Source: Magallana gigas (taxonomy: Eukaryota). Taken from it: 64,000 bases of DNA. Position 1 is the stretch's first letter; each line of letters opens with the position of its first letter. The position numbers were made by a program, and so were the translations under genes. Shown one piece after another: positions 17,303 to 25,896 of this stretch. The notes under the pieces were generated by a model. That model ran no database searches. It saw only the letters and a list, made by a program, of their open reading frames with translations, and was not told where the DNA came from. The DNA lies in the NCBI RefSeq assembly GCF_963853765.1, contig NC_088857.1, positions 19,344,001 through 19,408,000 of the forward strand, written 5' to 3'.

Positions 17303-20300
17303 TTAAAAGTTGCCCCTCAAGTACTCTCCATGCAAGTACACTGGGCTTGAGGCATTGTGGGTAAAAAGTATCCAACTCTTCCTGACTGGAACAATATGAA
17401 CAAAAGCCTTCAGGTGGATCTGAACTTTAAATCTGTGGTTGAACCTTCCCAAGCCTGATACTTTAACTATTAATCTACAAGAAAATAGTATTCAAACAAA
17501 TCGATTTTCATAAACAATTTAATATAACATCTTAATTGCCATCTGGTGACATTGTGCCTTAAAAAGTATTTAAGTCTTGATGTGAGCTACCTTAATGTCA
17601 GTATTCTACTACCAGTCTATGCAAAAGTTTTCTGGACCACACAGGACATTCGGTCCTGTGTAATGAATAAAAACACAGGACTAAACCAAATTTTGTCAGA
17701 CCCAGAAATTATATTTAGCTAATAGAAAAAGCATCCCTAGGATTTAGATTAAAGAGTGACAGCAAGGCGGAAAAAATAAACCTGAATTATTGCAGTTTTG
17801 TTTTTAGGAAGAATGGAAAGAAAACTGACAGCAATTAAAAAGAAGTACGGTAAAGCTCAAAACCGGACACTTGAGACATAGTACATTTTAGTCATTTTAG
17901 TGCAAAAAATAAGGCATCAAACCAGAGGCACTGCATATCAGTCAGGTCAGACGTCTTTGACATAAATTGTATTGTTACTTACCACTACCAGGCTGACCAG
18001 TGGGTCTTACAGTTGTCTGCCATCTAGGATTGCTTCTCATGGCTGGCATGTTGTTGGGGGTGAAGTATGTTCTCTGGGCTTGAGGCATGGTAGGTACAAA
18101 GTATCCAGCACTTCCAGGCTGGAACATCTGGCTCACCAGTCCTATTTGTTGTCCCTGAAAAGAATTTAGTTACAGATGACACTTATATTTGTGTGTTGGT
18201 CATCAACATTATTTATCGTAAAATAGGAAATGTTATAAATAGCATGTATATAAATAACCTGCAGCTTGCGCATGCGCTGCATGTACTGGGAGGCAAGATG
18301 AGCTTCGCGGTCCTCTTTTTTCTGTGCCAGAGCTACATATAGAGGTTTAGCTACAACGATTCTTCCATTCATCTTCTCGATTGCTTTGCTGGCTTCCTCT
18401 GGGGAACTGAAGCAAACGAATCCAAATTTCTTGGACATACCATCTTCAGTCATCACCTGTGTGCAAATGTGTTGTACATTTACTGCCTTGTTTATTTATA
18501 CATTTTGAAAAAAAAAACTTATATAGTAGTTTATTTTATTGTAAGCATCCCTATAAAGTTAACTCCAAACCATGAAATAAAGCATAAGTTCTGTTTATCT
18601 CACTCAAGTTTGAGAGAGGTCAGTATTATATTAAATTGGTTTTAGGGGTTCCTCATTCTCTTTCTTTTATATATAACGTACAGGCATGAAATTATGGTTT
18701 TTTTTTATCTTTCAGAAAGATAGAGGAAATTTATTTAAAAACAGTCAATTCAAAAATCCACACCTATCCATGGGATAATTTTTCAAAAATAAAAAAGGGT
18801 CATTTACATTTATTTTGCAAGACATGTACTTTGCAAAGGCTTCAAGTTAATTTTTTCGCACAATTTCTTTTCTTTTAATTAACGCAAGGTAGAATCGCAG
18901 ATAAATATGATATAGGAGTAATTTTTTTTTAGATACCATACTGTTAAAATATAGAAAAAGATGATTCTACATTATGACCCCCCCCCAAAAAAAATCAATC
19001 CCAATTCCTCGTACACTACCTTGGCACTGGTGATGGTACCAAACTGAGCAAACTCCTCTCTGAGTCGTTCATCATCGATGTTATCATCCAGATTCTTGAC
19101 GTACGCGTTGACTCCCAGTTCTCTTTGTTCTCCCTTATAAGAAAAAAACCAACGACTTACCCAATATTACATACGATGAATTTACTTAGATGATAAATAA
19201 CGCATGCATGGTTTTCCAAAAAGGCTAAACATAGTATAGATGGATTACCTGCTTGTCCATACTTGTATTATCCTGCATGTTGAGGAGAGCAAGATGAGCT
19301 TCGCGGTCCTCTTTTTTCTGTGCCAGAGCTACATATAGAGGTTTAGCTACAACGATTCTTCCATTCATCTTCTCAATTGCTTTGCTGGCTTCCTCTGGGG
19401 AACTGAAGCAAACGAATCCAAATTTCTTGGACATACCATCTTCAGTCATCACCTGTGTGCAAATGTGTTGTACATTTACTGCCTTGTTTATTTATACATT
19501 TTGAAAAAAAACTTATATAGTAGTTTATTTTATTGTAAGCATTCCTATAAAGTTAACTCCAAACCATGAAATAAAGCATAAGTTCTGTTTATCTCACTCA
19601 AGTTTGAGAGAGGTCAGTGTTATATTAAATTGGTTTTAGGGGTTCCCCATTCTCTTTCTTTTAGATATAACGTACAGGCATGAAATTATGGGGTTTTTTA
19701 TCTTTCAAAAAGATAGAGGAAATTTATTTAAAAACAGTCAATTCAAAAATCCACACCTATCCATGGGATAATTTTTAAAAAATAAAAAAGGGTCATTTAC
19801 ATTTATTTTGCAAGACATGTACTTTGCAAAGGCTTCAAGTTAATTTTTTCGCACAATTTCTTTTCTTTTAATTAACGCAAGGTAGAATCGCAGATAAATA
19901 TGATATAGGAGTAATTCTTTTTTAGATACCATACTGTTAAAATATAGAAAAAGATGATTCTACATTATGACCCCCCCAAAAAAAATCAATCCCAATTCCT
20001 CGTACACTACCTTGGCACTGGTAATGGTACCAAACTGAGCAAACTCCTCTCTGAGTCGTTCATCATCGATGTTGTCATCCAGATTCTTGACGTACACGTT
20101 GACTCCCAGTTCTCTTTGTTCTCCCTTATAAGAAAAAAACTAACGACTTACCCAATATTACATACGATGAATTTACTTAGATGATAAATAACGCATGCAT
20201 GGTTTTCCAAAAAGGCTAAACATAGTATAGATGGATTACCTGCTTGTCCATACTTGTATTATCCTGCATGTTGAGGAGAGCAAGATGAGCTTCGCGGTCC

Positions 20301-23300: not shown

Positions 23301-25896
23301 TGTTTTTCTCAAAGCATCCTTTCATATCAGCAGAACATTTTATCAATACTAATTCAATTCTAATCATACTCAACCATTTACGTAAACATTTTGATTTGTT
23401 TTGTTCGCAACAAATACATTGACATGTAATTTGTATACCAACTAGTCCTGATGCCAAAACAGTCTCTGTCATACTACCTTGGCACTGGTGATGGTACCAA
23501 ACTGAGAAAACTCCTCTCGCAATTTCTCATCATCGATACTCTTGTCAAGGTTCTTTATAAACAAATTTACTCCTGGTCCTATTCGGTGTTCCTTAAAATC
23601 AAACGATCAATAAAATAAGGAAATGTTTAATAGTTTAATTATATAGTTTAAAATATTTTTTTTAAAAATAAAAACAAAAACACAGATGCGAAAAGGTTAC
23701 TGGCATGTCCCTGCTTGAAGTGCGCTGCATGTACTGTGATGCAAGTTGAGCCTTACGATCCTCTTTCCTTTGAGCCAGAGCCACATACAGAGGTCTTGCC
23801 TCAATAATTTTTTCATTCATCTCAACGATCGCTTTTGTTGCTTCCTCTGGAGAACAGAAGCAAACGAATCCGAATCCCTTGGATCTTCCATCTTCAGTAG
23901 CCATCACCTGAATCAAGATTAATTATGCATTTTACTTGCATGCAAACAAGCATTACGCGTAAATACTATAACTATGCTTCCTAATTTTGTATATCTATAA
24001 ACTACAAGTTGATCTTGATACAAAGCAAAGAAAGAAATGTTATAGCGTAAAACTTATTTAAGTTTTAAGAGTCTAAACTCAATCTTTGACCTTAGGAGCA
24101 TCACATATAGTTTGTGGATGCTCAATTCACAATTACTGTAGTACTTCAATACCAGAAAACCAGTTTACCAACACTACACAAGATTTCATAAATTGCTCCC
24201 ATTAGACAATACCATCACTGTGGTAAAATCATCATTAAACATTAATATATTGACAATGCAGGGTTTCAGTTAATTTTTTTCAGAGATATTCTACTGAATA
24301 TATTCAATATATAGGCATGTTTCGTAACAAAACTGTTGATTTTTAAAACCTTAACTTGTATGAATGTTTGTTAGATATCACGAAAAAGACATCAAGACAT
24401 CAAGAAAACGTTAAGTTTGACAACAAATCAACAATCAAAGTCACTAGATCCTACTGTACCTTGGCACTGGTGATGGTACCAAACTGAGCAAATTCCTTTC
24501 TGAGTCGCTCATCGTCGATGTTATCGGCCAAATTCTTGACGTACAAGTTGACTCTCTGGTACCTGTTGATCCTCTCCATCCTGATGCGCTCAAACTTTTC
24601 CTTAAGCTCAGCCTGTCGCTCGATCTCCTTCTGATCACGTCCAACATATACTATTTTTCCAGCATTGTCATTTCCATTAAGAGCCTCTACAGCCTAAAAT
24701 TCAGCAGTGAAAAGACATCTATATCTATACTACTATATTAAAATAATAGACTCGAATTTTTTGTCTTTAATACCGAGAAATCGGAAGAATACTGTCTTTT
24801 GTTTTACATATTTTAAATATCATTGGTACTTGAAGATTACCAATTTGTTTTATTTTTTCTCAGTTAAGCTTCGCTAATTATTAATCAACGAAAATTCCTC
24901 AAAAAAATCCCGGAAATCACCTGGGTTTTTTGGATTTTACAATCTTGCGCTTGCGCAATACATTCACGCTAACGGGATCTTTAGTTTATGTTTCCACAAT
25001 ATCACATCTGCATGAATAAACTCAGAAATGATAATACAAATACTGGTAAATTTTCATTGGACTTTTGCTATTCTGTTCATATATATTAATGATTTCTTAT
25101 GAGAGAAAGTATAAAATAACAAATATACATTTCAACTAAGTACTTACTTTTGTCTTCGTGATGACAAAAAATATTTGATTACATGCAAAAAAATTAATAA
25201 CATTATATTTGTTAGGAGAGTGAAGATAGAATACAATGTATGTTTTATCGTAAAAATGAATAAATTAATGTCCTACGGACCCAGTTTTAAAAAGAAAGTA
25301 CATGTACGTTAGTGAAAAGGTGAAATCTTCCATTCTATGGATTAATATTTTAATTGAAAGGTATTTGCAGTCTCAAAAAGATTTGTTGTGATAAATTTGA
25401 CTGTTATTTTCAAGGCAACTTTCTCCAAAATCGTTCCAAAGCGATTCTGCAATTTTCTGCTACATTAGGTATAAGTGAGGCATTCTGACTGTAGTGAGGG
25501 CCTTTCCCGAGACACAGTTAGATTATTCAAACTAAGGAAAGTGTAGTGAAATTAATAGCATTATTGTAGGCTTATAGCATTGTTATGTAAATGTCAATAA
25601 TAAGTTGTGTCGATGTACATATTTCGTAAATGTCCGATATGCAGTGTTAACCCGTGCACGCATGGGTCAAAATCTAGTGCATTTAAATCCAGCAGTATTT
25701 TCCTTTTAACATTTTAGAAATCCCAAGACTTAAATCCATTACACAAGTTTAATAACTTGTGAAGCACTTCAAACAAACCAAAAACAATCCCAATTTCTGG
25801 ATACTTTATAGGTTTTATTAATTAGACAAATCCTACCTTTTCAGCAGCCTCTGGATCTTCAAAGCTTGCCATATCCATCTTGATGCGATCATACAT
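17303..25896 (-). CDS. PABP-derived paralog with five tandem RRM4-type domains (~675 aa). Exons 25837-25896, 24460-24693, 23701-23907, 23478-23591, 21232-21441, 21003-21116, 20240-20443, 20011-20124, 19249-19452, 19020-19133, 18259-18456, 17983-18154, 17303-17385
   Basis: Every exon is stop-free with GT-AG boundaries; the first 11 have lengths divisible by 3 (60, 234, 207, 114, 210, 114, 204, 114, 204, 114, 198). RNP2 and RNP1 are kept in all five repeats. The start and terminal exon assignments are less certain. Confidence 0.75.
18259..21231. repeat. Three near-identical ~990-bp tandem units, each carrying one RRM exon pair
   Basis: Period 990-991 bp (donors at 19249, 20240, 21232); intron sequence almost identical between units. 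Confidence 0.95.
21550..23215 (+). mobile_element. Frameshifted CR1/L2-group LINE (EN C-terminus plus RT), antisense within a paralog intron
   Basis: [11 protein letters not shown] (APE endonuclease), [37 protein letters not shown], across several frames. Confidence 0.92.
24718..25677 (+). mobile_element. Non-autonomous Helitron
   Basis: 5' TC, 3' hairpin cccgtgcacgcatggg followed by CTAG; inserted between A and T with no TSD (empty site visible in PABP intron 5 at ~8851). Confidence 0.9.

What the first reader, a model, noticed from the sequence alone, without database searches (positions are those of the whole stretch)
17303..25896. Hidden intact gene: a PABP paralog rebuilt as a five-fold RRM4 array without RRM1/2 or MLLE
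Seen: fragments that look like PABP debris in the ORF track splice into one continuous ~675-aa frame. It comprises half of RRM3, five RRM4 units each made of a phase-0 exon pair, and the start of the linker. The 114-nt half-exons use new acceptors and new linkers (EHRIGPG, GEQRELG). Older repeats are strongly diverged in DNA yet keep the RNP motifs with no stops, which suggests purifying selection. Known: RRM1-2 bind poly(A) and eIF4G, MLLE binds PAM2 proteins, and RRM3-4 bind A/U-rich RNA with relaxed specificity. Inference: a multivalent RNA binder unable to recruit eIF4G or PAM2 partners, possibly a translational repressor or PABP antagonist.
Basis: partly seen in the sequence, partly recalled or inferred. 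Interest (0 to 1): 0.9.

Follow-up and report, generated by a model that had tools for sequence, protein, structure and literature searches.

The report
Oyster PABP-derived gene of repeated RRM4 domains
A real, spliced and selectively constrained oyster gene, copied from part of the neighbouring poly(A)-binding protein gene, encodes five tandem copies of that protein's fourth RNA-binding domain and nothing that recruits translation factors; automatic annotation already lists it, but nobody has studied it.

Summary
On the minus strand of 17470-25896, 13 exons with GT-AG introns join into a 649-aa frame. It has a remnant of RRM3, five RRM4 units and about 57 aa of proximal linker. There is no RRM1, RRM2 or MLLE.

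An intact canonical PABPC gene lies about 6 kb downstream on the same strand (5.9-11.1 kb).

Contigs from two RNA-library runs of different studies, plus a few poly(A) reads, carry array-specific splice junctions. These include the new acceptors that give EHRIGPG and GEQRELG.

- dN/dS between units is 0.15-0.30.
- Against the C. angulata ortholog the RRM4 part gives omega 0.21 (p = 0.002). The RRM3 remnant looks relaxed.
- The exonic indel variants listed in the reads are multiples of 3 nt.

The gene is not hidden. RefSeq and UniProt already model it: C. gigas XP_034300920/XP_034300915 (A0A8W8N940) with four RRM4, and C. angulata XP_052692372 with three. Unit number therefore varies from 3 to 5. 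I found no paper citing these accessions.

Each unit keeps the helix after RRM4, which in yeast Pab1 contacts the next PABP and Pan2-Pan3. A role as a multivalent RNA binder or PABP antagonist is plausible but untested.

Similar RRM4 arrays are annotated in a lamprey and in rays. The scan had not noted this gene before on other DNA.

The parts
25837..25896 (-). Exon 1: ATG plus a remnant of canonical exon 5 (end of RRM3 RNP1 region, ...[11 protein letters not shown]). An in-frame TAG lies directly upstream. Homology to the canonical gene starts at 25866.
   Evidence: same start in RefSeq models P0151/P0154
24460..24693 (-). Exon 2 (copy of canonical exon 6): RRM3 helix 2 and strand 4, the inter-domain helix, and the first half of RRM4 unit 1.
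   Evidence: 95% identical to canonical 8595-8828. An array-specific junction to exon 3 is present in RNA contigs.
23701..23907 (-). Exon 3: second half of RRM4 unit 1 plus the helix after it.
   Evidence: The X4 contig of 338 nt joins 24458/23905 and 23700/23590 with no mismatch.
23478..23591 (-). Exon 4 (114 nt): new acceptor, linker EHRIGPG, first half of RRM4 unit 2.
   Evidence: junctions
21597..23225 (+). Degraded non-LTR retrotransposon piece (reverse-transcriptase ORF fragments) inside the intron of unit 2. It is not part of the coding sequence.
   Evidence: PF00078 hits; reads on both strands
21232..21441 (-). Exon 5: second half of RRM4 unit 2 plus helix.
   Evidence: Junction 23476/21432 in poly(A) reads (X22 3, X21 1) and 21231/20123 in an X1 contig. 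In-frame 3-nt indel variants at 21271 and 21429.
21003..21116 (-). Exon 6 (114 nt): new acceptor, linker GEQRELG, first half of young RRM4 unit 3.
20240..20443 (-). Exon 7: second half of young unit 3 plus helix.
   Evidence: The X4 contig 20445-20239 joined to 20123-20009 has loose ends that continue into the next exons.
20011..20124 (-). Exon 8 (114 nt): first half of young unit 4.
19249..19452 (-). Exon 9: second half of young unit 4.
19020..19133 (-). Exon 10 (114 nt): first half of unit 5.
18259..18456 (-). Exon 11: second half of unit 5, with a canonical-type tail (…[15 protein letters not shown]).
   Evidence: 100% identical to C. angulata
17983..18154 (-). Exon 12: copy of canonical exon 8 (proximal linker). 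The donor is phase 1.
17470..17474 (-). Coding start of the terminal exon (…G|AT TAA), at a cryptic acceptor in sequence derived from canonical intron 8. The 3' UTR continues to lower coordinates and its end is not determined.
   Evidence: Inferred from the C. angulata RefSeq CDS end (L002 17280) and the identical sequence in the window. Not tested with reads.
17320..17409 (-). Older, degraded relic of exon 8, now in the presumed 3' UTR.
5917..11114 (-). Context: the neighbouring intact canonical PABPC gene (RRM1-4, linker, MLLE). It is one of the two paralogs from which the array may derive, and the origin of most cross-mapping RNA reads.

Best explanation
Shown:
- This is a genuine, expressed gene of the Pacific-oyster lineage.
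- It arose from a partial copy of a PABPC gene, running from mid exon 5 to exon 8, placed upstream of the canonical PABPC gene.
- A roughly 1-kb cassette was then duplicated in tandem several times. The cassette holds the 3' part of exon 6, intron 6, exon 7 and the start of intron 7.
- Each truncated exon-6 copy gained a new phase-0 acceptor, so any number of cassettes splices in frame.
- The product is a beads-on-a-string protein: a vestigial RRM3 tail, then 3-5 'elongated RRM4' modules (RRM4 plus the helix after it), then about 57 aa of linker.
- The RRM4 modules are under purifying selection. The leader is not.

Inferred:
- The protein binds RNA multivalently with the relaxed A/U-rich preference of PABPC RRM3-4.
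- It cannot dock eIF4G or PAIP1/2, which need RRM1-3, nor PAM2 proteins, which need MLLE.
- Every module keeps the helix that in yeast Pab1 packs against RRM1-2 of the next PABP and is read by Pan2-Pan3. The protein could therefore join or cap poly(A) RNPs.
- The most likely role is as a competitor or modulator of canonical PABP at 3'UTR/poly(A) junctions, in particular tissues or stages.
For: Anatomy:
- Open frame with GT-AG at every intron, phase 0 at all but the last.

Transcription and splicing:
- Array-specific spliced contigs are present in RNA runs X1 and X4.
- The X4 k-mer depths are 223 for the old units and 602 for the collapsed young units, against about 1500-2150 for the canonical gene.
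- Poly(A) reads give 1-3 per array-specific junction.
- Read orientation fits minus-strand RNA.

Selection:
- Between units, dN/dS is 0.15-0.30 at dS 0.34-1.4.
- Against C. angulata, the RRM4 part has 7 non-synonymous and 9 synonymous changes, omega 0.21, binomial p = 0.002.
- Introns cannot be aligned between old units and the canonical gene, while exons are 77-95% identical.
- The exonic indel variants listed are 3 nt, and two just inside the adjacent intron are 1 and 4 nt.

Independent gene models:
- Models with the same start and linkers exist in two annotations.
- The C. angulata locus is syntenic.

Domains:
- Pfam finds four full-length RRM_1 stretches in P0151 and no MLLE.
- AlphaFold2 predicts four complete RRM folds at pLDDT 86-93, each followed by a helix.
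- The best solved match is yeast Pab1 RRM4 plus linker helix in 6r5k, then the human PABPC3 chain 2d9p.

Literature:
- RRM4 plus linker helix forms the PABP-PABP interface recognised by Pan2-Pan3 (PMC6547884).
- RRM4 is promiscuous and sits on the 3' UTR (bioRxiv 10.64898/2026.06.05.728833).
Against: - No protein-level evidence.
- The transcription start and the start codon are not verified. Reads at exons 1-2 are dominated by cross-mapped canonical mRNA: the variant letters equal the canonical letters, and the loose ends read canonical exons 5 and 7.
- Expression is very low in the two poly(A) runs, at about 0.1-0.3% of canonical junction reads.
- The two 3'-most junctions were outside the laid stretch.
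- The X1 and X4 contigs come from RNA libraries that may contain DNA. Only their intron-less joints argue for RNA.
- Young units carry K in place of the conserved G at RNP1 position 2 (KKFGFV), so their RNA affinity is unknown.
- Unit number varies, which could also mean that dosage is not critical.
- Conservation is shown only between very close taxa (C. gigas and C. angulata).
- Nothing here tests function.
Confidence: 0.6

Rival explanations
1. It is a transcribed but functionless partial duplicate (unprocessed pseudogene). Its open frame survives because the young units are recent and because gene conversion from PABPC paralogs keeps refreshing the exons.
For: - Three units are 97-99% identical.
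- Exon 8' and its flanks are near-identical to the canonical gene, and exon 2 is 95% identical to canonical exon 6, which suggests conversion.
- The leader evolves neutrally and is partly deleted in C. angulata.
- Poly(A) expression is very low.
Against: - Comparisons between array units (u1-u2, u2-u3) give omega 0.16-0.26 at dS about 0.9-1.2. Independent neutral decay after conversion would not give that.
- Ortholog omega is 0.21, p = 0.002.
- The new acceptors and all donors are kept in both species.
- Listed exonic indels are in frame.
- u2 and the young units form their own long-branched clade, so they are not recently converted.
Confidence: 0.2
2. The five-unit count is an assembly artefact. 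Near-identical ~992-bp units were over-expanded, or two haplotypes were merged, and the true gene has three or four units.
For: - C. angulata has one young unit and C. gigas RefSeq has two.
- Units are 97-99% identical.
- One X1 contig joins 21231 to 20123, which skips a unit or is a mapping ambiguity.
Against: - The collapsed young-unit contig in X4 has 2.7 times the depth of the single-copy old-unit contig (602 against 223). That fits three copies in the transcript.
- The three units differ at specific sites (L/M, V/A, intron indels).
- This rival changes only the number of units, not the nature of the gene.
Confidence: 0.15
3. The array exons are alternative upstream exons of the canonical PABPC gene. 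Read-through transcripts would splice the exon 8' donor (phase 1) to canonical exon 2 (acceptor phase 1), giving a giant PABP isoform.
For: Same strand, about 6 kb apart, and compatible intron phases.
Against: - The RefSeq model in C. angulata ends at a terminal exon with a stop, conserved in the window.
- No such model appears among the database hits.
- Not tested with reads, because the stretch laid ended at 19950.
Confidence: 0.05

Closest known systems
RefSeq/UniProt predicted proteins XP_034300920.1 and XP_034300915.1 (A0A8W8N940, Crassostrea/Magallana gigas) and XP_052692372.1 (C. angulata)
   Same: The same gene. They share the start (MYDCIKIDM...), the RRM3 remnant, the EHRIGPG and GEQRELG linkers and the position upstream of canonical PABP. 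Identity to the window exons is 90-99%.
   Different: They have four and three RRM4 units against five here. C. angulata lacks the 5' part of exon 2. The C. gigas models end earlier, in the linker. They are named as ordinary 'PABP1 isoform' or 'PABP4-like', and I found no study citing them.
Canonical cytoplasmic poly(A)-binding protein (PABPC1/4 type; the neighbouring gene at 5.9-11.1 kb)
   Same: A candidate source of the exons. Its RRM4, the following helix and the proximal linker are homologous, at 77-95% DNA identity in exons.
   Different: The array has no RRM1, RRM2, complete RRM3, distal linker or MLLE, and its RRM4 is multiplied.
Third C. gigas paralog XP_011413033 (A0A8W8N9L6): RRM1-4, no MLLE
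   Same: Its RRM4 groups with array unit 1 (support 96/94). It shares NDNAGK and [14 protein letters not shown], and it also lacks MLLE.
   Different: It keeps all four RRMs once each and is not encoded in this window.
neuPABP (PABPC1L2), a mammalian PABP paralog
   Same: A PABP-derived protein that does not bind eIF4G, has no MLLE and represses translation in vitro (PMC10546976).
   Different: Its domain make-up is different (from my own knowledge, two RRMs plus a unique N-terminal domain). It has no RRM4 array, and its function was tested experimentally.
Multi-RRM4 PABPC-like predictions in other animals: lamprey Lethenteron reissneri (P0001, 829 aa, intronless, RRM3 remnant + five RRM4, no MLLE) and rays (P0155 and P0219; P0006 is a similar protein of unknown source)
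   Same: The same overall architecture: RRM4 repeated, RRM1-2 absent, and MLLE absent or truncated.
   Different: Independent origin. The repeat boundaries differ, one is intronless and the lineages are distant. These are also uncharacterised predictions.

Membership tests
RRM domain proteins (PF00076) | Complete RRM with RNP2 and RNP1 motifs and a beta-alpha-beta-beta-alpha-beta fold | tested here: met
   Four full-length RRM_1 matches in the orthologous model P0151, E = 1.8e-82. AlphaFold2 gives four complete RRM folds at pLDDT 86-93. The window units keep (L/V/A)(Y/F)(V/I)KNL, and KGFGFV or KKFGFV.
Cytoplasmic PABP (PABPC, type I) | Four different N-terminal RRMs, including the poly(A)/eIF4G-binding RRM1-2 | tested here: not met
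   tblastn of PABP proteins finds no RRM1/2 exons between 25.9 and 64 kb. The model starts inside RRM3.
Cytoplasmic PABP (PABPC, type I) | C-terminal MLLE/PABC domain (PF00658) | tested here: not met
   No PF00658 in P0151 or P0154. Homology to the canonical gene ends in intron 8, before the MLLE exons.
Cytoplasmic PABP (PABPC, type I) | RRM4-type domain followed by the conserved linker helix | tested here: met
   The best solved match is yeast Pab1 residues 324-414 in 6r5k, then the human PABPC3 chain 2d9p. A helix is predicted after each RRM.
Cytoplasmic PABP (PABPC, type I) | Binds poly(A) and stimulates translation | not testable with these tools
   Needs biochemistry.
Unprocessed pseudogene / dead partial duplicate | Disabled frame or splice sites, neutral evolution, no spliced transcript | tested here: not met
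   Open frame with GT-AG at every intron. Omega 0.15-0.30 between units and 0.21 between orthologs. Spliced RNA contigs and reads.
MLLE-less PABPC paralogs (PABPC5 / PABPC4L / neuPABP type) | PABPC-derived RRM protein lacking MLLE | tested here: met
   The array differs from those paralogs in also lacking RRM1-3 and in multiplying RRM4.

The most novel reading that the evidence does not exclude
The repeated module is the 'elongated RRM4' (RRM4 plus linker helix). In that reading the protein is a valency-tunable adaptor or decoy for the PABP-PABP interface read by Pan2-Pan3. It would control poly(A)-RNP packing and deadenylation, or store mRNAs, in particular oyster tissues or stages. Copy number (3-5 units) would be a segregating variable. 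Selection for RRM4-only arrays would have acted independently in oysters, lampreys and rays.
Probability: 0.15. Interest if true: 0.8.

Novelty: new variant of a known kind. Interest (0 to 1): 0.5.

Why it matters
PABPC domain function is being dissected with engineered domain swaps and domain-number variants. Here nature has built a protein made almost only of RRM4-plus-helix modules. It keeps those modules under selection and varies their number between haplotypes.

If the protein is made, it isolates what RRM4 and its helix can do without eIF4G, PAIP or PAM2 partners: 3'UTR contact, PABP-PABP contact and possibly Pan2-Pan3 recognition.

The gene is also a clean example of gene birth. A partial duplication was followed by new phase-0 acceptors that make an exon cassette freely stackable.

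For annotation, the gene is currently named as an ordinary PABP1 or PABP4-like isoform, which hides its architecture.

Tried and rejected
- Tandem Repeats Finder missed the array because the period exceeds 500. The repeat finder found it.
- The search of protein representatives with one young exon did not return the oyster protein itself; the best hits were 54-68% identical. It did reveal the lamprey and other multi-RRM4 proteins, and P0001 then served as a length scaffold for the word-indexed search that found the oyster models.
- A short-query search with exon 2, meant to fish out transcript-derived ORFs that would show the 5' end, gave nothing closer than 88%. The transcription start stays unknown.
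- Raw poly(A) read depth over exons 1-3 and the 3' half of exon 5 cannot be used as expression evidence. The variant letters equal the canonical gene's, and the loose ends read canonical exons 5 and 7. Only junctions and contigs specific to the array were counted.
- Intron-to-intron alignment between the canonical gene and the units found nothing usable.
- No inverted repeats were found in the ~960-bp insertion of intron 1.
- Literature searches for an oyster RRM4 array or for the accession numbers found nothing.
- The idea that the array derives simply from the neighbouring canonical gene was set aside. Unit 1 groups with a third paralog, and u2 plus the young units form an older clade. The locus is a mosaic with later conversion at its 3' end.
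- Orthologs in more distant oysters could not be sought, because the genome collections on hand hold no animal genomes.

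
Full report
**What is in the window**

The PABP-like fragments between 17.3 and 25.9 kb all lie on the minus strand.

The same strand carries a complete canonical cytoplasmic PABP gene about 6 kb further downstream, at roughly 5917-11114. It has exons for RRM1-4, the linker and MLLE. The finding is therefore a partial copy of a PABPC gene sitting upstream of an intact one.

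RNA and DNA runs labelled as oyster hold the stretch. The closest proteins are from Magallana (Crassostrea) gigas and C. angulata.

**Anatomy**

Homology to the canonical gene begins in the middle of exon 5 (window 25866) and ends in intron 8.

I built a model whose introns all have GT..AG; all are phase 0 except the last, which is phase 1. The exons are:

- exon 1, 25896-25837: an ATG directly after an in-frame TAG, then ...[11 protein letters not shown]
- exon 2, 24693-24460: a copy of exon 6
- exon 3, 23907-23701: a copy of exon 7
- four further pairs, each a 114-nt exon followed by a 198-210-nt exon: 23591-23478 with 21441-21232, 21116-21003 with 20443-20240, 20124-20011 with 19452-19249, and 19133-19020 with 18456-18259
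- exon 12, 18154-17983: a copy of exon 8

The C. angulata RefSeq model then uses a cryptic acceptor that is conserved in the window at 17474. It adds ...G|AT TAA and gives 649 aa. Reading through the exon-12 donor gives 650 aa.

The 114-nt exons are the 3' part of exon 6 behind new acceptors.

The repeated cassette is about 992 bp. It holds the 3' part of exon 6, intron 6, the whole of exon 7 and the first ~115 nt of intron 7. Units 3-5 are 97-99% identical. Units 1 and 2 are 64-84% identical to them over the shared repeat families.

A degraded retrotransposon piece with reverse-transcriptase fragments lies on the plus strand in the intron of unit 2. An older exon-8 relic lies at 17320-17409.

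No PABP-like exon exists between 25.9 and 64 kb.

**Transcription and splicing**

I laid two poly(A) raw-read runs and the contigs of two other RNA-library runs on 19950-25949.

Most raw reads over exons 1-3 are cross-mapped canonical PABP mRNA:

- The letters read at 24493, 24527, 24531 and 24555 are exactly the canonical gene's letters.
- The loose ends at 25866 and 24458 spell canonical exon 5 (GKGKGFGFV) and canonical exon 7 (VMTEGG).

I therefore counted only array-specific evidence:

- An X4 contig of 338 nt joins exon 2, exon 3 (with the array-specific Ala codon) and exon 4 without a mismatch, at joints 24458/23905 and 23700/23590.
- X1 has the 24458/23905 joint too.
- Joint 23476/21432, across the 2-kb intron, is seen in 3 (X22) and 1 (X21) poly(A) reads, from an allele with an in-frame 3-nt deletion.
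- Joint 21231/20123 is in an X1 contig.
- The young-unit joints 20239/20123 and 20009→20441 are in X4 and X1 contigs. Their loose ends continue into the next exon of the chain.

The collapsed young-unit contig has 2.7 times the depth of the old-unit contig in X4 (602 against 223), as expected for three copies.

Read orientation is almost purely 'first mate on +' in exons, which fits minus-strand RNA.

Relative to the canonical gene, the array is at about 10-15% by contig depth in X4. In the poly(A) run X22 it has 1-3 junction reads against 891. Expression therefore differs strongly between samples, whose tissues I cannot see.

Three things were not tested with reads: the exon 1/2 junction (ambiguous because of cross-mapping), the two 3'-most junctions (outside the stretch), and the transcription start.

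**Selection**

Nei-Gojobori estimates on the RRM4 codons give dN/dS of 0.15-0.30 for all comparisons among the canonical gene, u1, u2 and the young units, with dS 0.34-1.4. The comparisons u1-u2 and u2-u3 are both inside the array. They give 0.26 and 0.16, which requires constraint on array lineages themselves.

Introns of the old units cannot be aligned to canonical intron 6, although the flanking exons are 77-95% identical.

Against the C. angulata ortholog (L002, colinear at 92-98%):

- The RRM4 and linker exons show 7 non-synonymous and 9 synonymous changes. That is omega 0.21, with binomial p = 0.002.
- The N-terminal RRM3-remnant exons show 13 and 2, which is no constraint.
- C. angulata has lost the 5' part of exon 2.

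The two indel variants listed in exon 5 are 3 nt, and the two listed just upstream in the adjacent intron are 1 and 4 nt.

**It is already annotated**

A profile search returned three predicted proteins:

- XP_034300920.1 / A0A8W8N940, named 'polyadenylate-binding protein 1 isoform X2', C. gigas, 495 aa, four RRM4
- XP_034300915.1, isoform X1, which uses an acceptor 15 nt upstream ([12 protein letters not shown])
- XP_052692372.1, C. angulata, 412 aa, three RRM4

All start at the same ATG and use the same new linkers. The C. angulata locus has the same order: array gene, then canonical PABP.

Unit number is thus 3, 4 or 5 in three assemblies. Only the young units differ in number, and each older unit has its ortholog in all three. 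No paper in the library cites these accessions.

**Origin**

In a tree of RRM4 modules, unit 1 groups with the RRM4 of a third C. gigas paralog, XP_011413033. That paralog has RRM1-4 and no MLLE, and it is not in this window (support 96/94). Unit 2 and the young units form their own clade on a long branch (99/99).

Exon 12 and its flanks are a much more recent copy of the canonical gene.

The locus is a mosaic of an old partial duplicate, internal cassette duplications and later conversion. The alignment is too short to date the origin.

**Structure and likely function**

Pfam finds four complete RRM_1 domains and no MLLE in P0151. AlphaFold2 predicts four confident RRM folds (pLDDT 86-93), each followed by a helix. 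The N-terminal remnant is of low confidence and there is no fixed inter-domain packing (pTM 0.27).

The best solved relatives are yeast Pab1 residues 324-414 (RRM4 plus linker helix, 6r5k) and the human PABPC3 chain 2d9p.

From the literature:

- RRM4 with its linker helix is the surface that packs on RRM1-2 of the adjacent Pab1, and Pan2-Pan3 recognises that interface (PMC6547884).
- RRM4 is essential in human cells, is thought to sit on the 3' UTR and is less sequence-specific (bioRxiv 10.64898/2026.06.05.728833).
- A PABP paralog that cannot bind eIF4G represses translation in vitro (neuPABP, PMC10546976).

From established knowledge, eIF4G and PAIPs need RRM1-3, and PAM2 proteins need MLLE.

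I infer a multivalent, effector-less RNA binder that can compete with, cap or bridge canonical PABP on A/U-rich 3' ends. The young units have K in place of the conserved G at RNP1 position 2, so their affinity needs measuring. None of this is shown.

**Comparison and verdict**

This is not a canonical PABPC, because the RRM1-2 and MLLE tests fail. It is not a pseudogene by any test I could run.

It is a PABPC-derived RRM4-array gene that automatic annotation has predicted but nobody has studied. Analogous arrays are annotated in a lamprey (intronless, RRM3 remnant plus five RRM4) and in rays. The repeat boundaries and gene structures differ, which suggests recurrent origin.

I rate it a new variant of a known kind, of moderate interest.

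Noticed in passing
window 5917-11114 (-): Complete canonical PABPC gene (RRM1-4, linker, MLLE). Its RRM4 segment is identical to that of Logan transcript-derived proteins P0269 and P0270. Its mRNA cross-maps heavily onto array exons 1-3.
   Followed up: partly
window 24718-25678: An insertion of about 960 bp in array intron 1, relative to canonical intron 5. Part of it (24750-25150) is covered by RNA reads on both strands at moderate depth, as expected for a dispersed repeat. No terminal inverted repeats were found.
   Followed up: partly
window 21597-23225 (+): Degraded non-LTR retrotransposon fragment (RVT_1 hits) in the intron of unit 2, with reads on both strands. At its upstream edge (window 23211-23220) C. 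angulata carries about 1.27 kb that the window lacks.
   Followed up: partly
window 26103-26172: A (TA)35 microsatellite about 200 bp upstream of the array's start codon. C. angulata has (TA)n(CA)n at the same place. It could affect the unknown promoter.
   Followed up: no
protein P0164 (C. virginica PABP4-like isoform X2): This model repeats the segment from the second half of RRM2 to the first half of RRM3 three times. It may be another exon-cassette amplification in an oyster PABP gene, or a modelling artefact.
   Followed up: no
proteins P0272/P0361 (XP_011413033, C. gigas): A third PABPC paralog with RRM1-4 and proximal linker but no MLLE. Its RRM4 is the closest relative of array unit 1. 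It is not in this window.
   Followed up: partly
L001 10001-12490 (Lethenteron reissneri): Intronless 829-aa 'PABP1-like' gene with an RRM3 remnant, five RRM4 units with long linkers, and a His/Ala-rich tail. It is a convergent counterpart of the oyster array.
   Followed up: partly
window ~31800-34300 (-), from L002 729-3200: The upstream neighbour in C. angulata is a 457-aa protein with no Pfam family on record. The window is 97-98% identical there.
   Followed up: no
window 20123/21231 and 23476/23898 joints: RNA contigs in X1 join exon 5 to the 114-nt exon of unit 4 instead of unit 3, and exon 4 to a young-type exon-7 start. Either this is mapping ambiguity among near-identical units, or cassettes are skipped in frame, which the all-phase-0 design allows.
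   Followed up: no
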